Below, piece after piece: positions 38,101 through 59,855 of a stretch of DNA of 64,000 bases. The notes beneath the pieces are model-generated. The model ran no database searches and was not told where the DNA came from. It worked only from the letters and a program-made list of their open reading frames with translations. The DNA is from Guillardia theta CCMP2712 (taxonomy: Eukaryota > Protista > Cryptophyta), in NCBI RefSeq assembly GCF_000315625.1, contig NW_005434457.1, positions 3,835 through 67,834 of the forward strand. The letters are read 5' to 3'. How positions within the stretch are numbered: position 1 is the first letter of the stretch; each line of letters begins with the position of its first letter. The translations under genes and the position numbers were made by a program.

Positions 38101-39446
38101 AGTGGCTCAGCTAAAGTCGTCGCCCCAAGTCAATCGAGGTCATGAAGCTGATGGTCAAGGTGAGAACTGGCCGCCCCTCCTCCCCCTTCTCCTCCGCCCC
38201 CCGCCGCTCCCTCTCCTCCTCCTCCTCCTCCTCCTCCTCCTCCTCCTCCTCCTCCTCCTCCTCCTCCTCCTCCTCCTCCTCCTCCTCCTCCTCCTCCTCC
38301 TCCTCCTCCTCCTCCTCCTCCTCCTCCTCCTCCTCCTCCTCCTCCTCCTCCTCCTCCTCCTCCTCCTCCTCCTCTTTTCTCCTCCCTCCTCCTCCTCCTC
38401 TTGGCCTTCTTGCCGCCGTCATCTCCTCTTCGTTCTCTCCTTCCTTCCCCTCCTCTCACCGGCTCACAACCTTGACAGGCCCATCACGCCTGCGGGGAGC
38501 ATGACGAGGCCCTGCGAATGTGCACGGCGATGGAGGAGAAGGGGCAGGGGGACCTGGAGGTGAAGCTCCTCATGAGCAAGTCGATGGCAGCAGGAGGGAG
38601 GCTGCAGGAGGCGATCGCTAAGATGCACGAGATGCTCAAGTTGGACCCCGAGTATCGCGACTGCAAGCAGGAGCTCAAGGACCTGAAGAGGATGGAGGAG
38701 ATGAGGAGCAGAGCAGAGCAGCTTCTCCGCACCCGCAGGTTCTCTGAGTCAATCGAGCTCTGCTCCGAAGCTCTCCGCATCTCTTCCTGGGCCACTGGCT
38801 TCAACGCTGCAGTTCTCCTCACCCGGGCCTCCTGCTGGGTTGAGCTCAAGTCGCTCGAGAAGGCGATCAATGACTGCTCCTCCTCCCTCGACCTGAACCC
38901 CCGGCTGGTCAAGGCTCTGATCTGCCGAGCTCGATGCTACATGCAGCGATCGGAGTACGAGGAGGCAGCCGAGGACTTCGAGCGAGCAGCGCAGGTCGAC
39001 CCCACCCAGAAGCTTCTGCTGCAGCACGAGATGAGCGAGGCGAGGAGGAAGGCGTCTGCTCCTTCCGACTACTACAAGGTCCTCGGCGTCAGCCCCTCTG
39101 CGACAGACAAGGAGATCCGAGCAGCGTACAAGAAGTTGGCGCTGCAGTTCCATCCCGATAAGCAGAGCGGAGGAGGCGAAGCTGCAGGCCGAGCCGAGCG
39201 GCAGTTCAAGCTCCTATCCGAGGCCTACGCAGGTGAGTCGTGCGCTGATCGCCCGGTAGAGGTTGACAAGCTGCTGCAGTGCTGTATGATGAGCAGAAGA
39301 GGAAAGAGTATGACAGGAGCAGAAACCAGAACGCGTTCGAGAACAGGGAGTTCTCGCATGGCTGGAACCATTCCTTTAATTCGAAGCGATCGAGCAAGCA
39401 GTGGGACCAACGCTCAAGGTCGTATAACTCATGGCAGCATAGGTAG
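35133..39446 (+). CDS. DNAJC7: DNAJC7-like TPR + J-domain co-chaperone with N-terminal SINA-like RING and (Pro-Ala)n linker
   Basis: CGVC...[15 protein letters not shown]...CPIC...IRNRALEKL (SINA-type RING). TPRs [25 protein letters not shown] and [27 protein letters not shown]-domain DYYKVLGV...[16 protein letters not shown]...FKLLSEAYA|[12 protein letters not shown]; stop 39444-39446. Confidence 0.85.
35600..35825 (+). repeat. Coding (GCTCCA)n hexamer repeat encoding (AP)n
   Basis: Tandem GCTCCA/GCTCCT/GCTCCC units within the open frame. Confidence 0.9.
38214..38374 (+). repeat. Intronic (CCT)n microsatellite
   Basis: About 160 bp of pure CCT repeat between the GT at ~38160 and AG at ~38478. 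Confidence 0.95.
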
Positions 39447-39605
39447 GGAGCGAGCGTCTCATCCGAAAGACACTCGATCTTGTACAATAAATCAAACCAT
39501 GAGATGTTTGCTCTGCCCATTCCACCCCCTACACTTCATCCGCTGCTTTCCGCTTTCTCACCCTCTCCTGGTATCTCCCGAGCCATCAGCAAGGTCAGAG
39601 TCACG

Positions 39606-40235
39606 TCACCTGCGGACGATCTTGTGCAGATGAATCTGAGCCTCTTCACTCATGCCAAGTTTGTCCACCTCAGCCTCTGGGATCTCCTCAACGTCAAACT
39701 CACCCGTGTCATGCAAAAGTGCGAAAAACATGAAGGAGAATGGTCTGTCGCAGAAAACGCTGTAAACGATGCTCCCCGGAACCGTCACCCTCAACAGAGT
39801 CCAGAGGAGGTCCTCGTGACTCTCTTGATCATAGAAGAGTTCAGACAAGATGACATAGTCGAATGTCTCTACATGGCTTTTGAGCTCAGATAACTCCCAT
39901 CCTCTCTCCCCCCACTCCAGTTCCACAGCCTTCATGCTCAGTCCTGCCGCGCATGCCATGTCCGCCTTCATCTTCAACCTGTCCAGGCAGCCTCCCCCTC
40001 CTCCTCGCTCTGTTGCTGTAACCTTCGCACCCATCTTGCTTAAGGCCTCCGCCAGAACACCCTCACCTGCTCCCAGCTCGAGGAGCTTCTTTCCTTTGAA
40101 GTTGCCCTTCTCCTTCTTGTCGAGGAACTCCAAGAGCACGAGCGACGCCTTCCACAAGTGTCCTCCTCCCTCAAGCCGTCTCACCTCCCCCAGCTCCTCC
40201 TCGCCCTTGGCCTCCATCTCCTTCCGCCCCGCCAT
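39606..40235 (-). CDS. METTL21/EEF2KMT-type (Methyltransf_16) protein-lysine methyltransferase
   Basis: [28 protein letters not shown] (motif I), [21 protein letters not shown]. Termini may involve extra small exons. Confidence 0.88.
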
Positions 40236-41209
40236 CCCTTGCAGAGCTGAACTAATCCAAATCAAACTAAAACGTTAGATAGTCGTGCGAGTGCCTCAGG
40301 ACCGTCGACAACTTGGCAAGTTCCCAGTCCCGGTGGCCCGGCACTGGCACACCGGGTGACCGCACTGTGACCGGCGGCCGGCGGGGCCCGGCCAGCCTGG
40401 CTAGTACGGTCACATCACTGACCTTAGCCACGGCCAGGGCCCGGCCCAGTGGCCGGGCACACACTCCGAGTCAGGCTGCGACACCGTTCGGACTGACACG
40501 CCGGGGCCGCTACTATAAACCTTTACTCAAAGTTAAGTTAAAAATCAGTACGAGGACAATAATGAGAGACAATTTAAACAGTAGCTTTCAACTTGCGCCG
40601 CCAATAATGGCGGTTGACGGTTTACAGCGGCGGGGGAACGATCCGGCGAAGGCTTGTTGGTGCCCGGCCAAAGAAACACTGATACACCAAACGTTGTGAG
40701 TCGAGGCTCTGACATGTCGAGTCCGGCACTTGTCAGCATCACTGCCAGGCGTCACAGACAGTCAACGCGAGGTCACGATGTCGACATGGCGTCCGGGATC
40801 AACAGTCACCAATGGCCCGGCCCATTCAGATATGAGGCACCAGGGTAGACAGGGCTTGAAGGAGGGGTGATGGTACCCGGCCAAGCATATCCAGTGATAT
40901 CAAACGTTGCGTCTTGAGATCTCCTTATGTCAGCATCACGAGGGAACAAGATCATAGAAGTCTTAACAGGTATCCGGGGACATCTAATACCACCCCACCT
41001 CGGCCCTAGAATCCGGTCTAACTGCTACCCCTCCTCGCACAGGAACATTCGCCCCCTACCCCCTTCTATAAACTGATTCTTGGCAGCCTCCGCTCCATCC
41101 CTCCTCCTGGTCAGCTTCCTGCTCCACGCGCTTGCTGCTCCTCTCCTTTGTCTGTGCTTGGACACCCTTGGCTCTGCTCTCTGAGCCCTGCTGTTGGCTT
41201 TTCGTCGCC

Positions 41210-41413
41210 ATGCACGTCGCTCGCGCCCCCTCTCCCTCTCCCGCGCGAAGCATGGGACCTGCGAAGCTCTACGCCTACGTCGAGCCCTCCAAGGACAAGA
41301 AGCTCAGCGCCCTCCGCGACTCCATCGCCCTCATTCGGAGCAACGCGCGGGTTGTGAGCGCGGTGGGGGAGTGGATGGAGCTGGGGGCGGGGAGCCTGAA
41401 CGAGAAGGCATGA
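41210..41413 (+). CDS. Microprotein family copy A (67 aa)
   Basis: cgccATG; MHVARAPSPSPARSMGPAKLYA + conserved cassette YVEPSKDKKLSALRDSIALIRSNARVVSAVGEWMELGAGSLNE-KA*; strong GC3 bias in this frame. Confidence 0.6.
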   Translation: MHVARAPSPSPARSMGPAKLYAYVEPSKDKKLSALRDSIALIRSNARVVSAVGEWMELGAGSLNEKA

Positions 41414-42003
41414 GACCAAGTGAATTAACATCGGAGCTGCACGTGAGAGCTGAGAAGACTGGCCAGGACAGCGAGGACGATGGCGATATACAAGAGCAGG
41501 TGCAGGGCAAGTAGCAGAGGCTAGGGGTAATTCAAGGCATGGTTTCTATTACGCCGGCTTCAGGGGCGATTTTTTGATGTAATATAGCCAGGTTACAAAA
41601 GATAGTAATAAACTTTGAGAATGCAAACTGAACCGTAAACCATCTTGAAGATTCGAATGATTCATGCACAAACGGAATTTGCAACTGGTCCCTGTTGGTT
41701 TTCATGATCATGACAAGAATCTCCTACCTACATCTGAACGTGTCACTTCATGGATGAAATCATGCAGCAAGTTGCAAGACAAGAAGCGACTCAATTCAAA
41801 GATTGTCGATAGGCACTGATACTGCATTGTGATCACTTCATCATGAAGAAATACTTCTCAGCTTTACCTCGCACGACCCTCATCCTCTTTCGAATCAAGT
41901 TTCACTTGGGAACTGTCGGAACTTCGGAGCACTGACTCGGGAGGACTGCTAAGGAGGTCGCCTACGGACTTCAACAGCATGGTTCTCGGAGGATCAGCTC
42001 AGC

Positions 42004-42155
42004 AAGGACAAGAAGCTCAGGACCCTCCGCGACTCCATCGCCCTCATTCGGACAAACGCGCGGGTTGTGAGCGCGGTGGGGGAGTGGATGTAGTTTGGGA
42101 AAGGAAGGGGGGGGGGGGGGGGGGGAGGGGGGGGGTTAAAGCCTGAACCAGCTAC
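42004..42155 (+). pseudogene. Microprotein family copy B (truncated)
   Basis: KDKKLRTLRDSIALIRTNARVVSAVGEWM then TAG (42091-42093) replacing GAG, a poly-G expansion, and remnant AGCCTGAACCAGCTA. Confidence 0.7.
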
Positions 42156-42259
42156 AGGAAGCTATTGTTTTCATGCAGCGAGGGTAAGACAACAAAGAAT
42201 AGTGAGTGTTCTCGAAAAGAATAATGAACTTCTTGGAACGAGGATTCCGAGCTGTAGCT

Positions 42260-43520
42260 CTACTTCTTTCTCTAGAGTTCAAGTCAGTTCTCGGCCTTTT
42301 CCTTCAAGTGTTAGGAAGTCGCTCCCATCACCTTAGCAAGCAAGTCTTTGTCCGCCTTCTGCAGATACTTGCGGCTCTGCTTTGCCAGCCTGATAGCAAA
42401 CAGCCGTCAAGGCATTCCAACGGCTGTTGATGTTGATGTTGATGTTCACACCTCCGCCTGACATCGTCGGGGTCCGGGCTGGAAGTCCTTGTCTGGAATG
42501 AGACGGGTCTATACTCACTACCGGACCGGGCAGAAGCAGCATCGGACACGTAGAAACCGTTGCTGTTCATCAGCTTGTTCCTGCAAAGCGGCAAGTCAGT
42601 GGTACAGGCAATCAAGGCGCCTTTACACAGCAGGGGCTTGGGACTGACCCAAACGCGTCTTGGTGTGCTGTGGGTAGCGAGTTGCCCGCAGTTGTCCCAG
42701 GCTGGGAATTGAAAACATCGGCAGAGATAGATTCTGTTATGAGATTCTGGATTGAAGACTTCAGGCTGGAGCCACTTTCATTTGAGAAAACCTCACCCCC
42801 CCGAAATTTTCATCGCCCTGGCTCCGATTCTTTAAAATTTTGTCCTGAAGCGTTCAACAAGATAGTTGTTCAGTGTTTGCTGGTATGGATATCACTACCA
42901 AGAGACTCTTTCACTCACACTCATCTTGATTGCCGTCCGTGGAGAGTTTGAATCTTCTTTTGAATAAGAACCACTTAACTCATTCGAAACACAAGATACC
43001 GTGATAGTCTTCCCTCCATGAAACATTCTTGTTGCTCCTGTAAGGTACAGGCCACTCATAATTTGTTCACACGACTCTCGGCCAGTCAATTACCTGTTGG
43101 TCCTCATACCAGATTCTGTGAAATCGTCCACAATCTCCGTAAAGTCATCCTGTCCTTTGAAATCAGAGCATGTTTACGATGGCTTCCTGTCTTCGCACTT
43201 CAGTCCTTTGCAGATCTTCAGAATCATCATCTGTGAGAGGCTGGAGATGGATTCAGGCGTCGTCTCCAAGATCAGAGGTCTGTTGTCTCTGGTGTCATAC
43301 CCCGAAGTGTCTTGTTGTGTCATCGACTGTCATGTTGTCCAGTAGCCGATGGTATTCTTCTGTGTCCTGTCAAGTCAACCATTACGGGCAACAGCTAACG
43401 CAGGAGAACTTGACACTTCACCACGTCCTCTTCCACCACGCCTCCTTGCAGCGAGGGAGCAGGACGATCGGCCCAGCCCTTCTGCCCCAGGGCCTTGCCG
43501 TCTCTCGGTGAGTTGCGCAT
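42260..43520 (-). CDS. Hypothetical multi-exon protein
   Basis: Series of short exons bounded by GT/AG, e.g. NKLMNSNGFYVSDAASARSGSEYRPVSFQTRTSSPDPDDVRRR|LAKQSRKYLQKADKDLLAK; no recognisable domain. Confidence 0.35.
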
Positions 43521-44233
43521 GATTCCTCGCTGAAGAGGACTTCAGCAGCAGCGCACATACAAAAAAAACTCGAGTGCCTGTGCTGCTACGAGCTTTGGGA
43601 CCGCGGCCTTGAGGTCTGTTAGCTCGCCCGGAGCTCGCTTGTCGCCTGTTGAATCGCAAGAATACGTGTGACGTCTGTGGGACGAGGAGGAAGAGCAAGC
43701 AACCTTGTTTCAATGCAGGGCTCGCACTTTCTTCTCTGAAAGACAAGATCGGGTCAGACAGCAAAGCGCTCGAGCCGAGACTTACATGGTGGACTCCCCT
43801 CCCTCATTCCCAAAGCCTTGAGTGCAGTTGGAACAATAGTTCCCCATCCTTGATCCTCCGCACTCTCTCCAGGTTCACCAACGAGCTGCTGACCAGTCAA
43901 TTCATATCTCCTCCTTCATCCTCCCTGTTACCCCCTTCCCTCCCGCCTACTTCCCTGTTGCCTGCCTGCCTGCCCGCCCGCCCGCCCGCCCCTCCATCTT
44001 CCTCCTCCGCCCCCCCATTCGCTTTCTCCTGCTCAACTCCGGGAGATCGCACACTATTTCTGCTAGTGGTAACCTAGCCGTGAGTGGTAACCTCCAGTAG
44101 GGACAAACAATGGCGAGGAGCGGGGAGTAGGGAATCGCAAGAGGGTCGGGGGCTCCGAGGAAGGGGAGGGGAAGAGACACGAGAGATGCACGCTGAGAGG
44201 AGGCGCTGGCGATCAGTGGAGACGTCAGCTGCC

Positions 44234-46306
44234 ATGCCGCTCCTCCCCCTGACTGCGGTTTCTCGCAGCACATGGCTTCTGCACCTGCTCCTCGCCGTGC
44301 TGTCACTGCCCCCTCCTCCCTCTCTCGGACTTACCCGTCATCCGGAGCATGTTCCCGTCGCCATCAACCTTCAGCATGTTCAAGGGGCTGTGGTGGAGGC
44401 AAGAATCGTTGGGATGCAACCAGACGTCTCCTACTCTGTCCTGATGCAGGCGATAGTCGACGGACTGATCGTCTTCTCGCAACCGATGAAGGTCAAGAGC
44501 TCGAGGATCGAAGTTACCATATCTGAACTGCCTCTGGGGGTGAATCAGCCGACCATTTCCTGCAAGCTCTATGACGACTACCCTCACCTCTCAACTACCG
44601 AGAGCCTCCTTGCTTCGGTTCAGAAGCAGCTCCCTATCACTATCAAGGAACCGCCATACTCCGACGAGACGAGGCTGAGGATTGCGTGCTCTGAGCAGAG
44701 CTTTGAGGTCCCTCCGTCGCTCCAATGCTGCAGCAGCTCGCACGAACAAGACCTGAACATCTCCCTGGCGTCCATAGGCAGCATCGATCGGTCGATTCAG
44801 ATGCTGCATGTGATGCTTCAATGGGACGGGCCTGTGTCGCTGGTTTTCTATGCTAGGTCGGAGGAGGAGGAGCGATTTATCTCAGCATTTGTGGAAGAGA
44901 CGATGATCCCAGCTGCCGTCAGAAGTTGTCGCGAGCTGAATCTCCAGCTACTGTCGGACTGCCACGACCAGGGCTCGCCGGAGCGGGTGTATCCCTTCCC
45001 AGTCAACAAGCTTCGATCTGTTGCCGTGTCAAGGGCCAAGACAGATCTCGTCCTTTACATCGACGTAGATTTCATTCCTTCGGCTGATGCTGCTCGTCAA
45101 CTGCAGCAAGCAATGTCGTCGCCATCCTTTGATCAAGCCGCTGGCCTGCTTGTGCTCCCGGCCTTCCTAACCGTCTGGTCGTCACCTTGGCCATCGCCAA
45201 TGAGGGTGGAAGACGAAGGGATGCAAGTAGAGCCTCTGCACTTAGACGAGCTGAAGCGCCGCTGCATCGCGGGTGACGTGTATCCTCCGGAGATGCCGTT
45301 CCGCATGTCGCCGCATGGAGCTACCGACTACCTCAAGTGGTTCCACATGCCAGCCAACAGGACAGAGCCGTTCCAAGTTCTCTACAGCATGTGGTACGAG
45401 CCCTACTTCGTCGTCAACCGCCGCCTGTGGAGGGGGATCAACCACCCTGGGCTCTTCGACGAGCGGTTCGTGGACGCTGGCCCAGACAAGGTCCAGCTCG
45501 CGTACGAGGCGGCAGTGTTGGGGTACTCGTTCTTCGTGCATCCAACCGCCTTCCTGGTTCACGTGCCTGAGAGGAAGGAGCTGTTCTGCCATGACAGGTT
45601 TGCTCAACTATGCAAGAAGCAAGAGGTCGATAAGACAAACTGGAAGGACAAGACTCTATACTTCTCCAACTTCCAGTTCCTCGACTTCATCTTCAGCATG
45701 CCAAGGTGGACGGACCACCGAGTCCCGGAGGGGTTTCATCGCCCCTGCTTCACCATCCCCTTTGCGTACATCACGGAGCTTTCTCGACGGGAGCTGATCT
45801 CGTTCCTCTTCCCTCCTGCGAAGGTCAAGATGGTCTGGACATGTGCGAGGGATAAGTGCGAACGAGTCCACGAGAAGTTTATGCTCTGGCAGGGTCATTT
45901 CCTGCCTCCCTCTGCCTTTCAAGTGCCTCCTCCGGACCTTGAAGCGCGTCAGTCCTTCAGGGAGGCCTTCAGCCGCTGGTGCTTCACTATTCCTCCCCTT
46001 GTCGGCATCTACTTCGTCCGTTCTGGCCGAGTTTTCATCCAGTATGACTCTCTCCTTCTTAACGGGGAGCCGGACGAGGTTGTCAATGCTTCTCACAAAC
46101 TCTACACCAGCAGCGCTGCCTTCGTCCTCGAAATGTTTGAGGACAGTGGGACGAGCACGGCGGAAGTCCCTTGGGAAAATGAGTGCTTTGAACAGACCGG
46201 CAGCCTTGCTAAGCTTGTCTTGTGCCATATCCAGTCTAAGATGGAGACGAGGCAGGGCAACTTCGACGTCATCTTGCGATCAACTTACTTGATGAGTGCG
46301 TCTTGA
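44234..46306 (+). CDS. GT49 family glycosyltransferase (LARGE / B4GAT1-like glucuronyltransferase), intronless, N-terminal signal/anchor
   Basis: WDGPVSLVFY, YPFPVNKLRSVA, LYIDVDFIPS (DXD), VLPAF, HGATDYLKW, YEPYFVV, FDERF...DKVQ...GYSFFVHPTAFLVH. Start at MPLLPL... is inferred (the ORF opens at 44084). Confidence 0.88.
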   Translation: MPLLPLTAVSRSTWLLHLLLAVLSLPPPPSLGLTRHPEHVPVAINLQHVQGAVVEARIVGMQPDVSYSVLMQAIVDGLIVFSQPMKVKSSRIEVTISELPLGVNQPTISCKLYDDYPHLSTTESLLASVQKQLPITIKEPPYSDETRLRIACSEQSFEVPPSLQCCSSSHEQDLNISLASIGSIDRSIQMLHVMLQWDGPVSLVFYARSEEEERFISAFVEETMIPAAVRSCRELNLQLLSDCHDQGSPERVYPFPVNKLRSVAVSRAKTDLVLYIDVDFIPSADAARQLQQAMSSPSFDQAAGLLVLPAFLTVWSSPWPSPMRVEDEGMQVEPLHLDELKRRCIAGDVYPPEMPFRMSPHGATDYLKWFHMPANRTEPFQVLYSMWYEPYFVVNRRLWRGINHPGLFDERFVDAGPDKVQLAYEAAVLGYSFFVHPTAFLVHVPERKELFCHDRFAQLCKKQEVDKTNWKDKTLYFSNFQFLDFIFSMPRWTDHRVPEGFHRPCFTIPFAYITELSRRELISFLFPPAKVKMVWTCARDKCERVHEKFMLWQGHFLPPSAFQVPPPDLEARQSFREAFSRWCFTIPPLVGIYFVRSGRVFIQYDSLLLNGEPDEVVNASHKLYTSSAAFVLEMFEDSGTSTAEVPWENECFEQTGSLAKLVLCHIQSKMETRQGNFDVILRSTYLMSAS

Positions 46307-46618
46307 CGCGAGGAGAGAAGAAGGACCGTCAGGATATCCCGTCTATCTCTATCTATCGTCGTGCATCAGTTAAACCAGTCCATCTCGAGATTTATGCTTT
46401 ATTTACATCTCACACCCAGTGGCACAAGCATATTCCCTCTTCTTCCTGATACTCCCCTCGCCCTTCCTCCTTACTGTACACCTATAACATCCTCTCACAT
46501 CCCGCCGTCCTCGCTGAAGCCAGCTCGCTATCAGCTGCTCCTCCCTCGTCAGACTTGACCCGTTTCCCTACATCCTTATCCTCTCCCCTTGATGACGATG
46601 TCCTGCTCGGTTGCTGCG

Positions 46619-46813
46619 TCATAGCTCGTTCAGCCCCCCCGCCCCCAGCTCCATCCACTCCCCCACCGCGCTCACAACCCGCGCGTTGCTCCGAATGAGG
46701 GCGATGGAGTCGCGGAGGGCCCTGAGCTTCTTGTCCTTGGAGGGCTCGCCGTAGCTTGAAGGTAGCTGGGGCAGGGGAGGGAGGGAGGAGGAGCTGCCAG
46801 GAAGTGCTTGCAT
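46619..46813 (-). CDS. Microprotein family copy C (64 aa)
   Basis: cgccATG; MQALPGSSSSLPPLPQLPSS + YGEPSKDKKLRALRDSIALIRSNARVVSAVGEWMELGAGGLNEL*. Confidence 0.6.
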   Translation of the reverse strand: MQALPGSSSSLPPLPQLPSSYGEPSKDKKLRALRDSIALIRSNARVVSAVGEWMELGAGGLNEL

Positions 46814-47401
46814 GGCGGTATCTTGCGAGCAGAGAGAGGATCGGAGATTTGAGGAGATACATAGTCTGAGATCGGATTGTTCCTGTCAATGAATGGGGTA
46901 GTTTAAAGGATTTGGAATGGGAAAAAGGGGTGGGGTGGTCATCAGATGTCACATGGCAATGTCTCAAGTTGCAACGTTTCACTCTCGTTTTCTGTTCCTA
47001 GTAGTAATATGTGAACGACCCTCGTGATCAGGTCGAGGAATGGTGAGACAGAACCGAGAAGGGAGGAGGAGAAGGGAGGAGGAGGAGGAGGAGGAGGAGG
47101 AGGAGGAGGAGGATTTTGAGGTGGGACGGCCATGTCAAGGCTCAGGGGCAACAAGAAGAGTTCAAGTTGGGGCCTCCTGAGGTCGGGAGAGCAAACGATG
47201 TATGAACGCGTCCATATAAGAACAAGAACCAACATCTGTTAGCCTGAGCCTCATCAGCAGACGACCTTCATTCGTATCACATATAAGCTTAACCCCTCCT
47301 CGCTCTTCCCCCTTACTGTACACCTGTAACACCCTCTCACATCCTGCCGTCCTCGCTGAAGCCAGCTCGCTATCAGCTGCTCCTCCTGCTCGGTTGCTGC
47401 G

Positions 47402-47602
47402 TCATAGCTCGTTCAGCCCCCCCGCCCCCAGCTCCATCCACTCCCCCACCGCGCTCACAACCCGCGCGTTGCTCCGAATGAGGGCGATGGAGTCGCGGAG
47501 GGCCCTGAGCTTCTTGTCCTTGGAGGGCTCGACGTAGGCGTAGAGCTTCGCAGGTCCGATGCTTCGCGCGGGAGAGGGAGAGGGGGCGCGAGCGACGTGC
47601 AT
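47402..47602 (-). CDS. Microprotein family copy D (66 aa)
   Basis: MHVARAPSPSPARSIGPAKLYA + cassette; near-identical to copy A including ~300 bp upstream. Confidence 0.6.
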   Translation of the reverse strand: MHVARAPSPSPARSIGPAKLYAYVEPSKDKKLRALRDSIALIRSNARVVSAVGEWMELGAGGLNEL

Positions 47603-48159
47603 GGCGACGAAAAGCTGACAGCAGGGCTCAGAGAGCAGAGCCAAGGGAGTCCAAGCACAGACCGAGGAGAGGAGCAGCAAGCGCGTGGAGCAGGGAGCTG
47701 ACCAGGAGGAGGGATGGAGCGGAGGCTGCCAAGAATCAGCTTTATAGAGAGTGGGTGGGGAGGGGGTAGGGGGCGAATGTTCCTGTGCGAGGAGGGGTAG
47801 CAGTTAGACCGGATTCTAGCGCCGAGGTGGGGTGGTGTTAGATGTCCCCGGATACCTGTTAAGACTTCTATGATGTTGTTCCCTCGTGATGCTGACATAA
47901 GGAGATCTCAAGACGCACCCCCACGCCAACGCAAGCCAGTATGACCCCTCATGCGCAACGTTTGATGTTACTAGATATACGAACCAGTAATGTTCTGTAT
48001 GTCAGCAATGTCCCAGTCACCCACCCACTTGATCCCGGATGCCATCTGGGTATCGTGACCTTGCGGATGACTAATAGAGTAATTGTTTTTTTCTTTTGCT
48101 AATAACTTTTTAAGTCGATCAAAGTTGATACTCCTTGTTGTGTTTCGTTTCAAGACTTA

Positions 48160-48540
48160 GGCCCGTTTCCCGCCGGCTCCCAGATTCCAGATTCCAGATT
48201 TTTTCATACAAATATAAGTCAATTTCTTTTTTTTGCTCCAAATGTTTTGGAGAACTCAACTATAAGTCATTTTAATTTGAGAATGAAACGATGCGGTTGA
48301 CTTTCCCAGATTTTGCTTTTCGAATGGGTAGGCACTATATGGAAATATATTATTAGCTCAATCGAGAGAAATTGTTAGAATGTAGGGAGGGTACGCTGGG
48401 AGCATCAAATATGAACAGGCAGGGGACCCCACCCCCTGTGAGTATGTATTGAAAGCACCGGTGAATATTTCAGCGTAAATTTCAAATCTATTTGAATAAA
48501 GTCAAAAATCTGGAATCTTGGAGCCGGCGGGAAACGGCCC
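48160..48540. mobile_element. Tourist-like (PIF/Harbinger) MITE, 381 bp
   Basis: TIRs GGCCCGTTTCCCGCCGGCTCCCAGATTCCAGATT... and ...AATCTGGAATCTTGGAGCCGGCGGGAAACGGCCC; flanked by TTA on both sides (48157-48159, 48541-48543); AT-rich non-coding interior. Confidence 0.85.
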
Positions 48541-49213
48541 TTATACTTCTACTAACTTGATATTCCCCTACTCTCGTGATTGTGTTCAAATGCACTATCG
48601 CTGAACTCATCAGACTCGAAGTGGAAGTCAATGTGTTAATGAGACAACAAAGGTTTGTGCTATGACATCATGCAAGGGGAGAACGATCCTTTTATCATCA
48701 GTCAAAGGAACCCCAGAGATGTAAGGGGTTCCGAGCAATGCTGCCTCATGCACCTCTTCGAGCTTCAATCAACTGATGGTTGCACCAGTAAAGGAGATCT
48801 CTCGCTCTCGCTCTTCCTCCCCCTCCCTTCCTCTCTGTCCCTGCCCTGCCCTGCCTCCCTTCCCCCCTCACTTCACTTTCCCTCTTTTCTCTGCTCTCTC
48901 CCTCTCCTTCCTCCCTGACCTCTGACCGTAACTTTATCGCTGTTACGAACACTGGCGATTAGAATGCTTCTGATCTTCATTGAATGCTCGACAGAATGCA
49001 AGTGACACAGCCTGACTACTGCAAGTGACTGACTGCACCACAACACAGTCTCACAATAAAGAAACTGAAAATCGTGTAGCGTTGACGGCATCAGCCATTG
49101 TCATAGAGAAAGAAGAAGAAGAAGAAACGAGGCTTGTTCTCTATGACTCCGGTTTTTATTTACATCTCATGCTGACTATCATACATGTTCTTGATGCTGC
49201 TGCCGCTGCTGCG

Positions 49214-49465
49214 TCATAGCTCGTTCAGGCTCCCCGCCCCCAGCTCCATCCACTCCCCCACCGCGCTCACAACCCGCGCGTTGCTCCGAATGAGGGCGAT
49301 GGAGTCGCGGAGGGCGCGGAGCTTCTTGTCCTTGGAGGGCTCGACGTAGCAAACGGATTTGTTGTTGTTGTTGTTGGAGGAGGAGGAGGAGGAGGAGGAG
49401 GGAAGGAGGACGGAGGAGCGAGTCGGAGGAGAGACATCGAGAGGGTTACAGGGAGTGGCATGCAT
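49214..49465 (-). CDS. Microprotein family copy E (83 aa)
   Basis: [39 protein letters not shown] + cassette, in frame. Confidence 0.55.
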   Translation of the reverse strand: MHATPCNPLDVSPPTRSSVLLPSSSSSSSSNNNNNKSVCYVEPSKDKKLRALRDSIALIRSNARVVSAVGEWMELGAGSLNEL

Positions 49466-50310
49466 TGCGGTGTGTGCCGAGAGAGGATGGGAGGTACCGT
49501 GTGTCTCCCTTTAGTAAGGGGGGATGCAGGGCGAGCGGTATTGCAACACGCAACGTTTCATGTGGATCTCCGTGCCGCGCCATGGCGAGTACGTGACTGA
49601 TACATGGCAGGCAGAGTCCGTGATCAAAAACCTGCGATAGAGGCAGCACCCTGTCCTCCCTCTAGTCATAGATACTGCCACCACCTATTACAGACGTGAT
49701 CTTAAGATTGCATCTTAGTATGATCGTCCTTTCAGTTGCTCCTCTTGCAGTTCCCTGTAATACTCTGACGGTTGTCCGTCAAGCTTGACAGTGAGCGTCT
49801 GCTCGAGCTCCAGTAGCTGCGTTACAGACTACTGGGTCACCATCTACCCATCATGATCTAGCCCAGAATTCCATCAATCCTTCCCTGGAAGAAAGCTTCA
49901 GGTCTGCAGCGTTGACGGCTGTGTGCAACCAAGCTGTTGAGGTGCATCTGAATTAGATTTCATGGCATTTGTCAAAATATAATCCAGCAAAGATGCTCTC
50001 AGCTCTTCCTGTAGACGTCTTCAACCCGAGCATCATGGTACCATCCACCAGGGCTCATCAGTGTGAAGTGAAGAACGTGAAAGACAAGATGATGGTTTGC
50101 ATCAAACTTCATGTTTGTTACATTCAACACCCGAATCTCAATATCATACATCGTCGCCCTGTCTCAGTGTTGCTGCCATCCCGCCTTTGCCCTACAGTTC
50201 CGCAACACAGAAAGCGCTCTTACACCTTCCCTTCCCCAATCCTTATCCTGATCCGAACCTCGTTCTTATTCTTGACTGCATTTTTCATGTTCTGTCACCC
50301 GGTCGCTGCG

Positions 50311-50576
50311 TCATAGTTCGTTCAGGCTCCCCGCCCCCAGCTCCATCCACTCCCCCACCGCGCTCACAACCCGCGCGTTGCTCCGAATGAGGGCGATGGA
50401 GTCGCGGAGAGCGCTGAGCTTCTTGTCCTTGGAGGGCTCGACGTAGCAAACGGATTTGCTGTTGTTGTTGTTGTTGTTGTTGTTGGAGGAGGAGAGGAGG
50501 AGGAGGAGAGGATGGAAGAGGGAGAGGGAGCGACATCAATCATCGAATCGAGAGGGTTACAGGGAGTAGCATGCAT
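50311..50576 (-). pseudogene. Microprotein family copy F (frameshifted in microsatellite, or assembly indel)
   Basis: MHATPCNPLDS... N-terminus like copy E, cassette intact, but ATG-to-stop length is 266 nt (not 3n). Confidence 0.55.
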
Positions 50577-51268
50577 GGCGGTGAGTGATGTGCCGGAGAG
50601 AGGATTGGACGAGGAGTGTGGAGACAGGGTTTTATAGGCTCAGCTTGTTCCTGTAAAAAGGGGGGTAGTTAGAGTGTAAAAGGGGGGTAGGTGTATAACA
50701 TACAAAATTAGGTGGAGTTCTAGAAGTTTCTGGACCTCAGGAGATGCAACGTTTCGTTTCTCTCTCCGCTAAAACTGCTTGAAAAGGGCAAGCGCATGTC
50801 CAAGTCACGGTCGGAGCCATGCCGGCAACACTCAAAGCAACCGCTCGTAAAGCCGCTCAGTCGGAGCCTCGGAGTGTCACAGTGCTGCCAGGCTCTCTGA
50901 GCGACTGACTCTGAGGCGCGCCGCTACGAGGCCACATGTCGACGCCATTGAAAAAAAACGGATAGTTGACTGAAAACTGTCAACTCTGTCCAGTGGTCGC
51001 TGATCATTCATCATGTCCACGTGCAACTCAAATCTCGAGATCTGCCTCCTTCGTTTTGCTTTACTTGGAGTAAAACTGTTCGACGGTCACGGTTACCCCC
51101 GTCACGTTACCCTTGCTCACAAGACCATCCGATCGGGGACCGGCTGAATTGAACATCCTCTCCCCTTGTACGATACCTGCTCCTCCTGCGCATGCTCCCG
51201 TTGTACGGTATCTTCTCCTGCACCTGCTCCCGCGTCCTTCTGTAACAGCACTTGCTGCGTCAACAACC

Positions 51269-51463
51269 ATGCTACGTGAAGGTGCGACTCGTGACTCCCA
51301 GTCCGCCGATCCTGGGAAGCTCTACGCCTACGTCGAGCCCTCCAAGGACAAGAAGCTCAGCGCCCTCCACGACTCCATCGCCCTCATTCGAAGCAACGCG
51401 CGGGTTGTGAGCGCGGTGGGGGAGTGGATGGAGCTGGGGGCGGGAAGCCTGAACGAGCTATGA
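51269..51463 (+). CDS. Microprotein family copy G (64 aa)
   Basis: accATG; MLREGATRDSQSADPGKLYA + YVEPSKDKKLSALHDSIALIRSNARVVSAVGEWMELGAGSLNEL*. Confidence 0.6.
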   Translation: MLREGATRDSQSADPGKLYAYVEPSKDKKLSALHDSIALIRSNARVVSAVGEWMELGAGSLNEL

Positions 51464-52276
51464 CGCTGGTTGGTAAGACTGAGTTGATTATCGAGAGATA
51501 TCAGCGCCATGCAAGCATGAGCGATCAACTGTGCGACGTTGTGTGGAAGATTTCAAGTATCAGGAAGGTTTAGCGTGGTAAGAGACCGTCAATGGGACTC
51601 GGGATGGTAACTCAGAGTCAGTTCAAGGCCGTGAGCAAGAAGCCGAGTGGATTCATGTAATAAACCCTTCAAGGATTCTTCAACCCAAGGGCTGATCAGT
51701 GTCAGTGGAGTGCCTGCGCAGTGCTACTTTCAGCCTTCACGTTGCCCCCCGGTGAGCTCTCACTGAGCAACCCTCGGTGAGCTCTCACTGAGCGGCTGCC
51801 GCGCCGCAGTCAAAAGTCAGTCACTGAGTCAATCAAGGTCAGTGACACTGGCACGGTGACACTGTGACTGAGCCTCGGGCCCTCCGAGGGTATGATCGGA
51901 CTGCCGTTATCGTCACGAGTCAACTTTTACCTCACTAGCCCAGGCTACCGGGACTCCGGGCGACTCGGCCCCGCCGTGACGGGCCCACGGCCACGAGTGC
52001 CCGGCAGACTGCCACCGGGGGCCCGCGGCGGCGCCGATCCGGCAAACCAGCGAACTTCGAACTTCTCCGAGGCTCCGAGCCAGTCTTCCGGGCGGTGGCT
52101 TCCGGCATGTCACACACTGGGTGACGAGTCTCATGCGGTAGCAGCCGCGCCACCGTCGTGACAATAGCCAGTCAGCATCGGCGGACACCGTGGCAGGCGT
52201 CGGTACCGCCGGGCAGCTCGGCCGCGCACTGTGGCACTAGTCGCGGCCCGGCCCGCGCGGAGGCGGCTAGTCACCG

Positions 52277-52506: not shown

Positions 52507-55500
52507 CTAGCGTTCTCCTTTCCTCGTCCCCTGCACCATCATCGCTGAGTTTGCGCCATCTCAAGCTCTCGATTTCTCACCTCGTCTTCTTCCGTGGCTC
52601 AACTTCCTCCTCCACCACTTCGTCCTCATTCTTCTGCTTCAGTTGTGTGCTCTGCTGACTCTGCTGCGTCGCTCCGCCAACCTCCTCCACCAGCGCCTCC
52701 TGCTAAACACTCAGAACCAGCCACGAGGACGGGATGCACAAACCATGCGGGGAGGGTCGAGGAGGGGGCCTTGTGCCGGCTTCTGTTTCTTCTTCTTGGC
52801 GGAGGCGATGGAGGGAGCCATGTAGGACTCGACCATCGTCTTGTGCCTGTGCCACAGTGAGAGGCAGAGGAGCGAGAGGTGAGGAGATACTTCGACTCCT
52901 CGCACAGCAGCTGAACATCGATGGATCCTCTGTCGTCGGCGTCAAGGGCTGACGAGAAGAGACACAGCAAGGGACCTTGAGGAAGGAGTGATGGAGAGGT
53001 TGCCATCATTCACGAGCTGGAGGGTTGCTAGGAAAGTCCTGCAGACGTCGAAGCGCGACATCCCATGCACCTGACAGCGACAAGGGAAGGGAGGTTAGCG
53101 ACCCCTCACCCCACGTGCTCTCACTCACGATGTTCTCGAAGGGAACCACCTCCTCCACAGCCTTCACTTCTCGCGCGACTCTTCCCTTCACAGTCTCTCC
53201 ATAGGACTGCTGCTCGTCAGCACACCCTCTTCGTCTCCGCCTCCTCCTCACATGGATGTCAAAGGCTGGCCGCTTGTCCTCCTCTTGCAGCTTCGGCTCA
53301 ACTTTGCTCTGCCACTCACGCACCTGCGACACATGAGGGCCGATTGAGACAAGATGGGGAGAGGCCAGTTGGGGGGGGGGGGGGGGGGGGGGGGGGTAGG
53401 GGTAGAGGAGGAAGGAACTCGTCTACGCCCTTGAGGTACTTGTCGACATAAGCCTGGAAGACCTTCAGAAGGAGCTTCGGCCACCCTCAGCCTCACTTTG
53501 CACATTTGCTCGTACGTGAGGTCGTCATGAAACTCTATGTCAGGCTCTGTTGCAGAGCTCAGCAGATTCGCCCGAGCAGCCTCTCTCCTCATCACCTTGC
53601 GTTGCTTTCTTGTGGAGAGCAGCTGAAAAAGTCTCGGGCCCCTCCTCTGTGCCCACGTCACCATTCCCAGCGAAAGGACAAGAATCTTCACCGTTCACAA
53701 AATCGTTGTCCCATCCTCCGTCTCCATCGTCGTCGTCGTCAACCCCTCCGCACATGTCCTCGTACTCCAAGGGCTTCTCCCCTGCAAGGTTGTCCAAGAC
53801 TGAGGGAAAGGAAGGGGCAAGCAGAGCAAGGGTCTGCACCAGCAGCCGGGAGGTCGACCATGTCGTACTCATCTTCTTCAACTTCGAGCAGCTGAAGTTT
53901 CTGCTGGTGACGTCAGCATCTCCAGGTTCAAGCGGTTGACAACCGCGAGGGAAGGAAGGGAACGAGGCCGAGGCTCCCTGCTGCTCTTGAGCTGGAGAGC
54001 AAGCACGCGGTTCCTCTCCTCTACGAACGCCTGTGAAGGTTCAGAGCATGGCTTTCCTGGAGCAGCAAGGGGTGGGGGAGGGGGTGGGGGGGGAGACAAG
54101 TCGACTGAGACGATGAGAGGGACCTTGGAGAACTCGTGGAAGAAGGGAAGCTTGAGCGAGCGCGTCTGATAGGACCACAAGTCCACTGCAACCTCCGTCA
54201 TCAGGATAGGAGGGAAAGCGACAAGAGCTGCAGCAACAACCGCTCGCTGAATGCTGGCGAGATGCGGAGGCCACGTTGGGCTTGCGAGTGGTGGAGGCCT
54301 TCTTGAAGGGGCGGGACGGGATGTCCATCCGGTCATGGGGGTCTGGTTGCAAGTCACTGGGTCCCTTCAGTCTCTTCCATTGCCCTTCACTGACCGAGCA
54401 TCCTCCAGGGATCACTCGCCTCCTCCACTCGATGGCCTCTTGCCGTCTTGCGATCATCTGCTGGGGACAGACATGATTCTTGCGCGCGGTGTCGGTCAAG
54501 TCTCATGCTCACCCTCTGCTTTCCACCCTTGCATGCCTTCCATCCCACCTGCTCCCGGGTCAACGATGAGCAGCCAAGGGCGCGGGGGAGAGCAGGAGGA
54601 GCAGCTGGTAGGAGTGAAGACTCAACACACCTGCAGCATCCTCGTAACCATCGTCGTCGTCGTCTCCCTCATCCTCGTGATCGAAATTAACATCAAAATC
54701 AACCGTCTGCTTGTAGCGATCAGTGAACTCTGTATCTAGCTGTCCTTTCACCTGATCCTTTGCGATGTTGGTGATGTTTGGGTCGTTGAAAGCTTTCTCC
54801 TGCTCCTGCTCAAGCAACTTACTTGACGAGGCTCCGGAGGCGTCCCTCACCTCGGAGCGGAGCTTTTCTACCTCGAGGGATCTCTCGAGTTTGTTGTCTG
54901 TTGTGAAGTTCAAACAAGAGGAAGCCAGCAACTACTCTGTCTCTCACCAAGGATCCCTTGCATACTTGAATCGAGGAGCAGGGCGCCGGAGGAGTGGACA
55001 GTGGCTGTTGAGAGCCTGTGACAAGGCTGAGCAGCATGCAGTGACAGGGCAAGCAGGCGAGACCTGAGGTCTTTGTTGGGGTCGGGGTTCTCGTTGTCCA
55101 CGTCGAGGCTGAGCATGAGGAGCATCGAGTTTTGGTTGGATTTCACGTTCTCGCCATCATCTTCCGCCTGGATGAGAGCAGTTTCAACGCGAGACAAGGA
55201 GAAACGTGGAGCAAGTGCAGTGTCAACAAGCGGAATCGTCGACAACCTCAACGAGGTCGATCGCAGAGCTCTTGGCCTCACGAATGTCATCGAGGGCGAT
55301 GAACTGAACCTCGTCAGCGAAACATTTCTGCTAGATGGGTGAGGACACGGAGGGCAAGACAGAAGTTAAGCACCTCAGGCTCGTTCTCCTCCTCTTCCGC
55401 GTCATCCTTCCTCTTCTGCTGCCTATCTGTGATGATCTCGAGGACAGCAAAGACCAGGCGGTGTAGATATTCGACTTTTCTGCTGTACACACAAGTAGAC

Positions 55501-58401: not shown

Positions 58402-59855
58402 TCTCCAGTATCTCCTCTCACCTTCAGTTTCTCTTCTCCCATTTACATCTTTTCCGCGGCCCACAAAGTTTGCCATGTCCTTACCACCCACCCTTGAAGT
58501 ATTGTTTTCCTCATACCCTACCCTATATAAAACTTCCTTTCACCCTACCATTTTAGATGGATCCTGTCGAATAGTACTACCCTACCTACTTCGGGGAGAA
58601 ATTCCTCCACCCCCTCTGTTGACCCGTAACATTACCCTCCGGAATGCTTCGATTAGACGCTACCTCACCCTACCCCCTGAATCCTTGCTTTTGACCGTCT
58701 GCAGGAGCCAATTACCCCACCCTCTCTTCAAGTACCCCATTTTCATATCACCCTACCACCTATACACAGCTCCAATCCCTGGAAAAAGCCCCCTTCAATC
58801 GATGACCCACCCGAGGCACAATTGTACCCCCTTGAATTTGTACCCACCCTCATCTCATACCACCTTGGTTTGACTACCCCCCAGGATCCCTCCTTTCCCC
58901 CTTTGGGCCTGTCACACCCGGTGTCCGAAACGGTTCCTGAAACATACAAAATAAAATATTTTTAATATGTCAATAATACTTATAGAGTTTTAGAGTAATG
59001 GCTTTTAAAACTGATGTCCAGGAATCCCATGATTAAAATTGTATTAAGCAAGTTTTAAAAGTTATATTTGGGGATTCCGGTTCTAGCTGTGAGAGGAGAG
59101 GATAGAAAATTCATACGAATTAAAATTAAACTATGGTGGATTCTAAAACTTGAAATGGTACAAAGGCTACATATATGGTTTTAAAGTGGTAATTCTACTT
59201 TTAGCGCCAGCTCCGCTGACCATGGCGACCAGCAATGGTAAGGACACTGAGCAAAGAGGCGCGTGTTTGTGCCGCCATGAAAGGCAAGAAGAGTTGAGTA
59301 GAAAGAACGATGAAAACGATATCAATGATGAGGAGATGAGAATCTGCATGTCTTCCTTCTTGTCAACCTGCTTTGTTCTTGTTCATGCTACATTCTTCTA
59401 CGACTGCTGTTTCCCTTCGCCTCCATGCCAATCATCACGATCACAACAACATTGGAGTTACAAAAACCAGGGATAAAATATTTGTCTGCATGCATGTTCG
59501 GGTTGTAATCATTGTCTTCTCTGCTGTGATCATGGTGATGTTGGTTGTTCACATATTCCTCGTCTCAATCATTATTTCTTCTCTACACCTGGATCCACGT
59601 TTCCATCATAGTTTCTCCAGCTACAAACGTATGCATCACTAGAAGTGTCATGATTATCAACAATTTCGTCGCCACCACCATCACCACCACAACAACAACA
59701 AACAACAATCCCTCATCGCTATCCATCTCTTCGCAATCCGCTGCAACATCTTGGCGAGTTGCGATATCAGCCACGTATTTTTTTCCCATGAAAATCATCA
59801 GAAAATTATCCGCTCTACATGTTGCGCATTGCCAATTCTATCTGTCCTCTGCACC

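What the first reader, a model, noticed from the sequence alone, without database searches (positions are those of the whole stretch)
40902..51463. Cluster of seven microprotein genes with a hypervariable N-terminus and a near-invariant 44-aa C-terminal cassette
Seen: a ~135-nt block encoding YVEPSKDKKL(S/R)AL(R/H)DSIALIRSNARVVSAVGEWMELGAG(S/G)LNEL* recurs seven times in ~10.5 kb on both strands (41276+, 42004+, 46619-, 47402-, 49214-, 50311-, 51329+). Nearly every third codon position is G/C in this frame. In five copies an ATG (usually in a ccATG context) lies in frame 20-39 codons upstream, although the N-termini fall into unrelated types: MHVARAPSPSP..., MQALPGSSSSL..., MHATPCNPLD...SSSSNNNNN and MLREGATRDSQ.... 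Inference: a family of 64-83 aa proteins with a diversified Ser/Pro-rich module on a homogenised constant module. This is the layout of RiPP-type precursors (variable core plus conserved recognition/follower peptide) or of a diversifying effector/tag system. I recognise no family for the cassette.
Basis: partly seen in the sequence, partly recalled or inferred. Interest (0 to 1): 0.85.

Follow-up and report, generated by a model that had tools for sequence, protein, structure and literature searches.

The report
Cryptophyte small-protein gene family cluster
The seven repeated blocks are the conserved C-terminal halves of a local cluster of small protein genes, which belongs to an unannotated family of at least 150 members found only in the alga Guillardia and its close relative Hanusia; it is real and new as a family, but nothing suggests peptide-natural-product precursors.

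Summary
The ~135-nt cassette occurs seven times at the stated places. Five copies have an in-frame ATG, c6 has its ATG out of frame, and c2 is truncated with a stop.

The window is Guillardia theta CCMP2712, scaffold C217. Close copies exist only in this cluster, plus two 48%-identical paralogues on C108. A family profile, however, finds at least 150 module copies genome-wide, none with an internal stop, mostly in local tandem or inverted arrays. It also finds Hanusia phi and MMETSP transcripts.

The shared module is PSRxKQLxxLxxSIxLI…G(E/D)xxxL, usually at the very C-terminus. AlphaFold2 predicts it confidently, in two divergent members, as a 16-residue helix plus a beta-hairpin behind a disordered tail. 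No Pfam, PDB, Foldseek, VIA or ESM match was found.

The module is under purifying selection (omega about 0.2). N-termini evolve about six times faster but not with omega above 1. Inside the cluster the cassette has dS 0–0.1 beside unalignable, mosaic flanks, which points to gene conversion.

RNA support for this cluster is weak. No RiPP-tailoring enzymes lie nearby.

My reading: an orphan small-protein family with a docking mini-domain and a drifting disordered tail; function unknown. Earlier notes of this scan flagged similar microprotein clusters elsewhere in this genome; I did not check them.

The parts
41210..41413 (+). c1: intact 67-aa small-protein gene (cassette 41276-41413, variant tail LNEKA)
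   Evidence: A 95%-identical contig, L010, from another Guillardia-like sample keeps the ORF.
42003..42107 (+). c2: decayed cassette fragment (5' truncated, TAG after GEWM, followed by poly-G)
46619..46813 (-). c3: intact 64-aa gene. It shares its 3' flank with c4 (46456-46544 vs 47298-47386, 94%).
47402..47602 (-). c4: intact 66-aa gene; inverted duplicate of c1 over about 510 nt
   Evidence: A few RNA reads lie on its 3' flank.
49214..49465 (-). c5: intact 83-aa gene with a poly-Ser/poly-Asn N-terminus
50311..50576 (-). c6: cassette intact (50311-50445), but the c5-like ATG at 50574-50576 is out of frame after a microsatellite tract. Either a pseudogene or an assembly indel.
51269..51463 (+). 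c7: intact 64-aa gene. The public model GUITHDRAFT_121232 splices out the conserved GEW...stop part.
40908..41404 (+). Left arm of the inverted duplication c1/c4 (partner 47408-47917). The two arms enclose c2, the GT49 gene and c3.
47408..47917 (-). Right arm of the inverted duplication c1/c4
40902..40910 (+). Upstream motif AAACGTTGC of c1. The same motif, in sense orientation, lies at 46971-46979 (c3), 47955-47963 (c4), 49550-49558 (c5) and 50746-50754 (c6).
   Evidence: 5 matches against 0.24 expected. Almost absent from other family loci.

Best explanation
Shown:
- The seven blocks are the C-terminal coding parts of a local cluster of single-exon small-protein genes in Guillardia theta. 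Five are intact, one is frame-shifted and one is truncated.
- The cluster is a diverged subfamily of a family of at least 150 copies restricted, as far as detected, to Guillardia and Hanusia. The family's hallmark is a ~33-aa module, PSRxKQLxxLxxSIxLI…G(E/D)xxxL, at or near the C-terminus.
- The module evolves under purifying selection. The N-terminus is low-complexity, microsatellite-encoded and evolves about six times faster.

Inferred:
- The module folds as a 16-residue amphipathic helix packed on a beta-hairpin. This rests on prediction only.
- Near-identity of the cassettes inside the cluster (dS 0-0.1), next to unalignable and mosaic flanks, comes from gene conversion among neighbouring direct and inverted copies. 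It does not come from selection on every base.

Inferred at low confidence: the module is a docking mini-domain that binds one common partner (a protein or a nucleic acid) through its conserved polar N-cap (S, R/K, K, Q) and hydrophobic face. The disordered tails are loosely constrained, perhaps phospho-regulated, appendages. The proteins would be cytosolic or nuclear, not secreted or processed.
For: Copy number. Close copies occur only in this cluster, plus two on C108. The family profile A4 gives 150 scored hits out of 185 candidates. None has an internal stop, and most lie within a few kb of another hit. Arrays of near-identical whole genes sit on C81, C62, C20 and C274.

Relatives. Hanusia phi transcriptome proteins, MMETSP transcripts and a few GUITHDRAFT models were found. 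Their shared signature is shown.

Fold. H28-43, E47-49 and E55-57 at pLDDT 85-94 in c4. H75-90, E96-98 and E104-106 at pLDDT 87-92 in a 107-aa C62 member.

Selection.
- In 12 dispersed SRAKQL-type loci the medians are dN 0.14, dS 0.585 and omega 0.23, with a maximum of 0.39.
- In ten orthologue-like pairs the N-terminus differs at 25.8% of positions and the module at 4.5%, Fisher p 6e-17.
- Pooled omega is 0.44 for the N-terminus, 0.205 for the module and 0.97 for the tails.

Gene conversion. Cassette dS is 0-0.1. The flanks are mosaic: c1~c4 share the 5' side, c3~c4 the 3' side, c5~c6 the N-terminus, and c7 shares GKLYAY with c1 and c4. All within-cluster replacements fall at family-variable positions.

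Coding signature. GC3 is 0.93, and the start context is shared.
Against: - Transcription of this particular cluster is barely seen. There were 17 raw reads in one RNA run, and no contig in about a dozen runs guessed to be RNA (their record does not say), although the GT49 gene between the copies is covered.
- Between this subfamily and the C108 type, omega is 0.85-1.05 over 33 codons.
- Two of the seven copies are broken.
- In this GC-rich DNA all three frames of the cassette are nearly open, so intact ORFs alone prove little.
- The fold is only predicted, and a 33-aa unit may not fold on its own.
- No partner is known, and a homodimer test gave no verdict.
- No peptide evidence exists.
Confidence: 0.55

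Rival explanations
1. RiPP-type precursors or a diversifying tag system. The variable N-terminus would be the core or cargo. The constant cassette would be a follower peptide recognised by tailoring or export enzymes.
For: The layout is a variable part plus a constant part. Many paralogues exist. The constant part sits at the C-terminus and most family members end exactly after it.
Against: - No tailoring enzyme lies within about 20 kb.
- The constant part is predicted to fold.
- The variable part is low-complexity with no conserved Cys, Ser or Thr pattern.
- N-terminal omega is 0.44, not above 1.
- N-termini of other subfamilies are acidic or long and unrelated.
- No signal-peptide-like hydrophobic start is seen by inspection.
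Confidence: 0.04
2. A conflict-driven ampliconic family, for example meiotic-drive-like, gamete- or stage-specific, or toxin/antidote-like. Copy number and palindromic arrays would be selected in themselves, and expression would be confined to a stage that is rarely cultured.
For: - At least 150 copies lie in tandem and head-to-head or tail-to-tail arrays with near-identical members.
- The family is restricted to one lineage.
- Non-module parts evolve fast.
- Expression of this cluster in culture RNA is very low.
Against: - There is no evidence of omega above 1 anywhere.
- Several members are transcribed in ordinary culture transcriptomes of Hanusia and Guillardia.
- Sexual stages of Guillardia are not documented (my own knowledge).
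Confidence: 0.12
3. Dosage arrays for an abundant structural component, such as the periplast, ejectisome or another cryptophyte-specific structure. Identical tandem copies would serve high output, as with histone genes.
For: Arrays of identical whole genes at 1.3-2.0 kb spacing. Proteins are small and the family is restricted to one lineage.
Against: - RNA is low or undetectable for this cluster, while a neighbouring ordinary gene is well covered.
- N-termini differ between subfamilies, which is not expected of a uniform building block.
- No similarity to R-body (RebB-like) ejectisome proteins was found in Pfam.
Confidence: 0.1
4. This particular cluster is a silent, decaying offshoot of the family. 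Its copies would be pseudogenes kept similar only by gene conversion, with ORFs open by chance in GC-rich DNA.
For: - Two of seven copies are broken.
- Omega is about 0.9-1.0 against the C108 type.
- All three frames of the cassette are nearly open.
- No RNA contigs were found.
Against: - Every family-invariant residue is kept, and all within-cluster replacements lie at variable positions.
- The start context and an upstream motif are conserved in five copies.
- The related sample keeps the c1 ORF intact.
- A few reads lie on c3, c4 and c7, with the first mate on the gene's own strand each time; the library's strandedness is not known.
Confidence: 0.1
5. Small organelle-targeted proteins. The variable N-terminus would be a cleavable presequence, and the 44-aa cassette the mature subunit.
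For: The N-termini of c1, c3, c4 and c5 are rich in Ser, Pro, Ala and Arg and lack acidic residues. Presequences are known to evolve fast (my own knowledge).
Against: Many family members have strongly acidic or long unrelated N-termini. None has the hydrophobic signal peptide needed for the cryptophyte plastid route (by inspection; no predictor was available).
Confidence: 0.05

Closest known systems
Tandem or palindromic multigene families under concerted evolution (for example histone or rDNA arrays, and ampliconic gene families)
   Same: Local direct and inverted copies. Near-zero synonymous divergence within arrays beside diverged or mosaic flanks. Broken copies are still homogenised.
   Different: In this cluster only a ~135-155 nt stretch, the module-coding part, is homogenised. 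The rest of each gene is not. In other arrays of the same family whole genes are identical.
RiPP precursor peptides (conserved leader or follower plus variable core)
   Same: A short ORF with one conserved half and one variable half, in many paralogues.
   Different: No tailoring genes nearby. The conserved half is predicted to fold. The variable half is low-complexity and not under diversifying selection. No secretion signal.
Cryptophyte phycoerythrin alpha-subunit family (a nuclear multigene family of small lineage-specific proteins in G. theta; my own knowledge, cf. the title of PMC5784005)
   Same: A cryptophyte-restricted family of small nuclear-encoded proteins with many paralogues and divergent N-terminal extensions.
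   Different: No sequence or predicted-fold similarity. Alpha subunits carry multipartite targeting signals and a chromophore-binding Cys; these proteins have neither. Not tested beyond the Pfam and PDB searches.
Small intrinsically disordered regulators with a short conserved C-terminal binding element (for example CP12-type proteins; my own knowledge)
   Same: A 60-110 aa protein, mostly disordered, with one short conserved C-terminal element. It works like this only by inference.
   Different: No homology. CP12 motifs and Cys pairs are absent. A copy number of at least 150 is far beyond such regulators.

Membership tests
RiPP precursor | Tailoring or processing enzyme genes co-located with the precursor genes | tested here: not met
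   Pfam on the large ORFs around the cluster gives GT49, RING, TPR-DnaJ, MORN or nothing.
RiPP precursor | Variable core with conserved modification or cleavage positions | tested here: not met
   The N-termini do not align, are low-complexity (poly-Ser, Pro, Asn) and have no conserved column.
RiPP precursor | Core under diversifying selection | tested here: not met
   Pooled N-terminal omega is 0.44 in six orthologue-like pairs of other family members. It could not be tested for the window copies themselves.
SINE/MITE-type interspersed repeat | Many dispersed copies with random frame disruption | tested here: not met
   Close copies occur only in this cluster. The 150 distant module hits have no internal stop.
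SINE/MITE-type interspersed repeat | Defined element ends with TIRs or target-site duplications | tested here: not met
   The conserved block begins at the first cassette codons and ends 3-18 nt after the stop. No shared terminal repeats were found.
PSRxKQL C-terminal-module family (defined here; Guillardia/Hanusia) | Signature P-S-(R/K)-x-K-(Q/K)-L-x2-L-x2-S-I-x-L-I … A-x-G-(E/D)-x3-L | tested here: met
   The window cassettes keep every invariant or near-invariant column except Q, which is K here. Profile E-values are 1e-15 to 2e-16.
PSRxKQL C-terminal-module family (defined here; Guillardia/Hanusia) | Small ORF with the module at or near the C-terminus, behind a non-conserved N-terminus | tested here: met
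   ORFs are 64-83 aa. The module is followed by an 8-9 aa tail, where most relatives stop right after the module.
PSRxKQL C-terminal-module family (defined here; Guillardia/Hanusia) | Predicted helix plus beta-hairpin | tested here: met
   AlphaFold2 on c4 and on a C62 member. Prediction only.
PSRxKQL C-terminal-module family (defined here; Guillardia/Hanusia) | Purifying selection on the module | tested here: inconclusive
   Clear for other subfamilies, with omega 0.2-0.23. For the window subfamily there are too few changes within the cluster, and omega is about 0.9-1.0 against the C108 type.
Concerted-evolution gene array | Synonymous divergence near zero among neighbours while flanks are diverged or mosaic | tested here: met
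   Cassette dS is 0-0.1. Flank sharing is mosaic.
Organelle-targeted protein with cleavable presequence | Presequence-like N-terminus throughout the family | tested here: not met
   Many members have acidic or otherwise unrelated N-termini. This is by inspection only; no targeting predictor was available.

The most novel reading that the evidence does not exclude
The family could be a modular 'constant dock, free tail' system. A folded C-terminal mini-domain would be kept uniform by gene conversion and would plug into one cellular machine, such as an export, degradation or chromatin complex. Microsatellite slippage would keep generating new disordered tails. That would make it a eukaryotic generator of peptide diversity, used in genetic conflict or in host-virus or host-symbiont interplay.
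Probability: 0.1. Interest if true: 0.8.

Novelty: new member of a known kind. Interest (0 to 1): 0.45.

Why it matters
If real at the protein level, this is one of the largest gene families of Guillardia theta. It has at least 150 copies, is almost wholly missing from the public annotation, and carries a mini-domain that matches no library.

It adds a sizeable block of taxonomically restricted small proteins to a model cryptophyte. It also gives a clean natural example of gene conversion confined to a ~140-nt coding module.

It corrects one public gene model, GUITHDRAFT_121232. It removes a tempting but unsupported RiPP reading.

Tried and rejected
- Pfam on five window ORFs and on 20 module sequences found nothing. 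The best hit was a chance E 0.2.
- A PDB sequence-profile search gave only BolA at E 0.19 over 15 residues, which I take as chance.
- Structure searches gave nothing usable. Foldseek against PDB had a best E of 1.1. VIA-align wide had a best Z of 2.1. The ESM Atlas by shape gave TM of at most 0.5 to unrelated families, and by features gave no usable hit.
- The homodimer prediction for the module (complex prediction) gave no verdict, score 0.02. It is not evidence either way.
- A second word-indexed protein search with 20 full-length members returned only 6 proteins, all already known.
- Paper searches for PRJEB17505 and for six GUITHDRAFT ids gave 0 papers. A keyword search gave nothing relevant.
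- The contig L010 was considered as possible transcript evidence. It is colinear with the genome for 984 nt, including 400 nt upstream, so it is most likely DNA of a related strain.
- Family-wide omega over all subfamily pairs (median 0.65 on 21 codons) was judged too saturated and noisy to use.
- The other ORFs in the repeat units of the C81, C20 and C108 arrays had no Pfam hit. The only exception was an alpha/beta hydrolase beside the C274 array.
Full report
**Observation**

A 29-nt probe from the cassette hits seven places and none in shuffles. The repeat finder, a seven-way alignment and a self-BLAST show 129-156 nt blocks at 95-99% identity between all copies. The exception is c2, at 89-94% over about 100 nt.

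Five copies carry an in-frame ATG and give ORFs of 64-83 aa: c1, c3, c4, c5 and c7. In c6 the c5-like ATG is out of frame behind a (TCC)n/(AAC)n tract. c2 is 5'-truncated, has a TAG after GEWM and runs into poly-G.

GC3 is 0.93 in the cassette frame. Five of the six ATGs (all but c7) share a cgcc/cgcaATGCA context.

**Where it is and how many copies exist**

The window is scaffold C217 of an 87-Mb, 669-contig genome. One hit, GUITHDRAFT_121232, names it as Guillardia theta CCMP2712.

A six-frame search of the whole genome with the cassette finds only the seven copies plus two tandem paralogues on C108. Those are 79-80 aa and 47-49% identical. This excludes a SINE or MITE.

**A much larger family**

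A profile search of 1.84 billion proteins found 23 hits. The interpretable ones are all small proteins (61-178 aa) from G. theta, Hanusia phi (a transcriptome-derived EukProt set), MMETSP transcripts, and two ENA assemblies that hold Guillardia-like contigs.

They share a ~33-aa module, PSRxKQLxxLxxSIxLI…A-x-G(E/D)xxxL. In most members it is followed directly by the stop codon.

Searching the genome with that module profile gave 150 scored hits out of 185 candidates, so 150 is a lower bound. None has an internal stop. By my reading of the table, most lie within a few kb of another hit, in direct or inverted orientation.

Arrays of near-identical whole genes were read on four scaffolds:
- C81: 103 aa, one copy every 2.0 kb
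- C62: seven copies of 107 aa
- C20: seven copies
- C274: two alternating types

Only a handful of members are annotated. No paper mentions them.

**Is it coding?**

- Within the dispersed SRAKQL-type subfamily (12 distinct loci), the medians are dN 0.14 and dS 0.585. Omega is 0.23, with a maximum of 0.39.
- Ten orthologue-like pairs compare CCMP2712 with the ENA organism or Hanusia. The N-terminus differs at 25.8% of positions and the module at 4.5%, Fisher p 6e-17.
- For the six pairs with DNA, pooled omega is 0.44 for the N-terminus, 0.205 for the module and 0.97 for post-module tails.

So the module is a constrained protein element. The N-termini are weakly constrained, not positively selected.

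For the window's own subfamily the evidence is thinner. Omega against the C108 type is 0.85-1.05 over 33 codons. Within the cluster there are only five replacement and four silent variable codons, although every replacement falls at a family-variable position.

**Structure**

AlphaFold2 with a 10-sequence alignment predicts c4 as a disordered 27-residue tail, a helix (28-43) and a beta-hairpin (47-49, 55-57), at pLDDT 85-94.

A divergent 107-aa C62 member with a 25-sequence alignment gives the same helix plus hairpin at pLDDT 87-92.

No sequence or fold library recognises it. These are predictions only, and a 33-aa unit may need a partner to fold.

**Why the cassette is near-invariant here**

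Cassette dS among the copies is 0-0.1. The flanks are unalignable or shared in a mosaic pattern:
- c1 and c4 share about 510 nt of 5' sequence, as an inverted duplication that encloses c2, the GT49 gene and c3.
- c3 and c4 share the 3' flank.
- c5 and c6 share the N-terminus and upstream sequence, at 86%.
- c7 shares only six more codons with c1 and c4.

Even the frame-shifted c6 keeps a perfect cassette. Selection on the protein cannot remove synonymous differences. I therefore infer recurrent gene conversion over a ~135-155 nt tract.

The N-terminal coding parts are largely microsatellite-like: (TCC)n, (AAC)n and Pro/Ser runs. That explains the fast length and frame changes.

**Expression**

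In one 2026 RNA run only 17 reads lay on 5.9 kb. They fell on c3, the c4 3' flank and c7, with the first mate on the gene's own strand each time.

Contigs of three older runs, guessed to be RNA, cover the GT49 gene but none of the small genes. None of about a dozen such runs holds c4.

Family members elsewhere are transcribed. Hanusia transcriptome proteins exist, and the MMETSP transcript P0009 equals the C80 copy. This cluster is at best weakly expressed in culture.

**Interpretation**

The RiPP or diversifying-tag reading fails its testable criteria:
- There are no tailoring enzymes nearby.
- The constant part is predicted to fold.
- The variable part is low-complexity without conserved positions.
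- N-terminal omega is below 1.

The most economical account is an orphan, lineage-restricted family of small proteins. Each would have a C-terminal docking mini-domain and a drifting disordered tail. The family would have grown by tandem and inverted duplication and been homogenised by gene conversion.

The binding role is an inference. It rests on the conserved polar N-cap, the hydrophobic face and the position at the C-terminus. A homodimer test gave no verdict.

The rivals I could not exclude are a conflict-driven ampliconic family, dosage arrays for a structural component, and a silent decaying offshoot.

**Earlier scan notes**

One note (s1-432963) pointed to an upstream AAACGTTGC motif. 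I confirmed five sense-oriented sites against 0.24 expected, 93-361 nt upstream of the ATGs of c1, c3, c4, c5 and c6. The motif is nearly absent from other family loci. Its proposed 5'UTR intron could not be tested.

Other notes (for example s1-432881) describe microprotein clusters elsewhere in this genome that may be the same family. I did not check them.

Read laying was given 5,951 letters.

Noticed in passing
window 44084-46306 (+): A 740-aa single ORF with a GT49 'glycosyltransferase for dystroglycan' domain (PF13896, E 1.4e-25). Its 3' end is covered by contigs of three runs guessed to be RNA. It lies between the inverted c1/c4 arms, so the small genes converge on it from both sides.
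   Followed up: partly
window 51269-51573 (+): The public model GUITHDRAFT_121232 (91 aa, P0003) joins c7 after ...RVVSA to downstream sequence. That splices out the family-conserved GEW...stop part, so the predicted intron is probably wrong.
   Followed up: partly
window 40902-40910, 46971-46979, 47955-47963, 49550-49558, 50746-50754: AAACGTTGC lies in sense orientation 93-361 nt upstream of five of the seven copies (5 matches against 0.24 expected). c4 has a ~39-nt insertion right after it relative to c1. It may be a promoter or TSS element. A GT...ACAG intron-like stretch follows it in c1 and c4, untested.
   Followed up: partly
window 48436-49032 (+): A few reads of the 2026 RNA run, first mate on the + strand, lie between c4 and c5, where no gene was recognised. 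Unexplained.
   Followed up: no
window 38140-38412 and 47056-47130: A long (CCT)n microsatellite of about 230 nt, and its complement (GGA)n between c3 and c4. Poly-G runs lie at 42105-42135 (after c2) and 53352-53395.
   Followed up: no
L029 (G000:C102) vs P0017 / P0029: The MMETSP transcript product P0017 and the genomic ORF of the C102 family member agree from ...DEPRCSP onward but have different N-termini. Some family members probably have an intron in the N-terminal coding part.
   Followed up: no
L010-L012, L048-L052 (ENA ERZ930071 / ERZ930064, PRJEB17505): Two assemblies labelled metagenome hold Guillardia-like contigs that are 78-99% identical to CCMP2712 loci. They are apparently a related strain or species and are useful as an outgroup. 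No paper was found for the project.
   Followed up: partly
window 35133-37067 (+), 38518-39633 (+), 59545-60342 (+): Ordinary neighbours: an ORF with weak RING-finger matches (below Pfam's cut-offs), a TPR plus DnaJ protein, and a MORN-repeat protein.
   Followed up: partly
L046 (G000:C274:7000-16500): An array of two alternating subtypes of the family in alternating orientation (71-72 aa each, MAQVPALET... and MTQALSLDT...), next to an alpha/beta-hydrolase ORF.
   Followed up: partly
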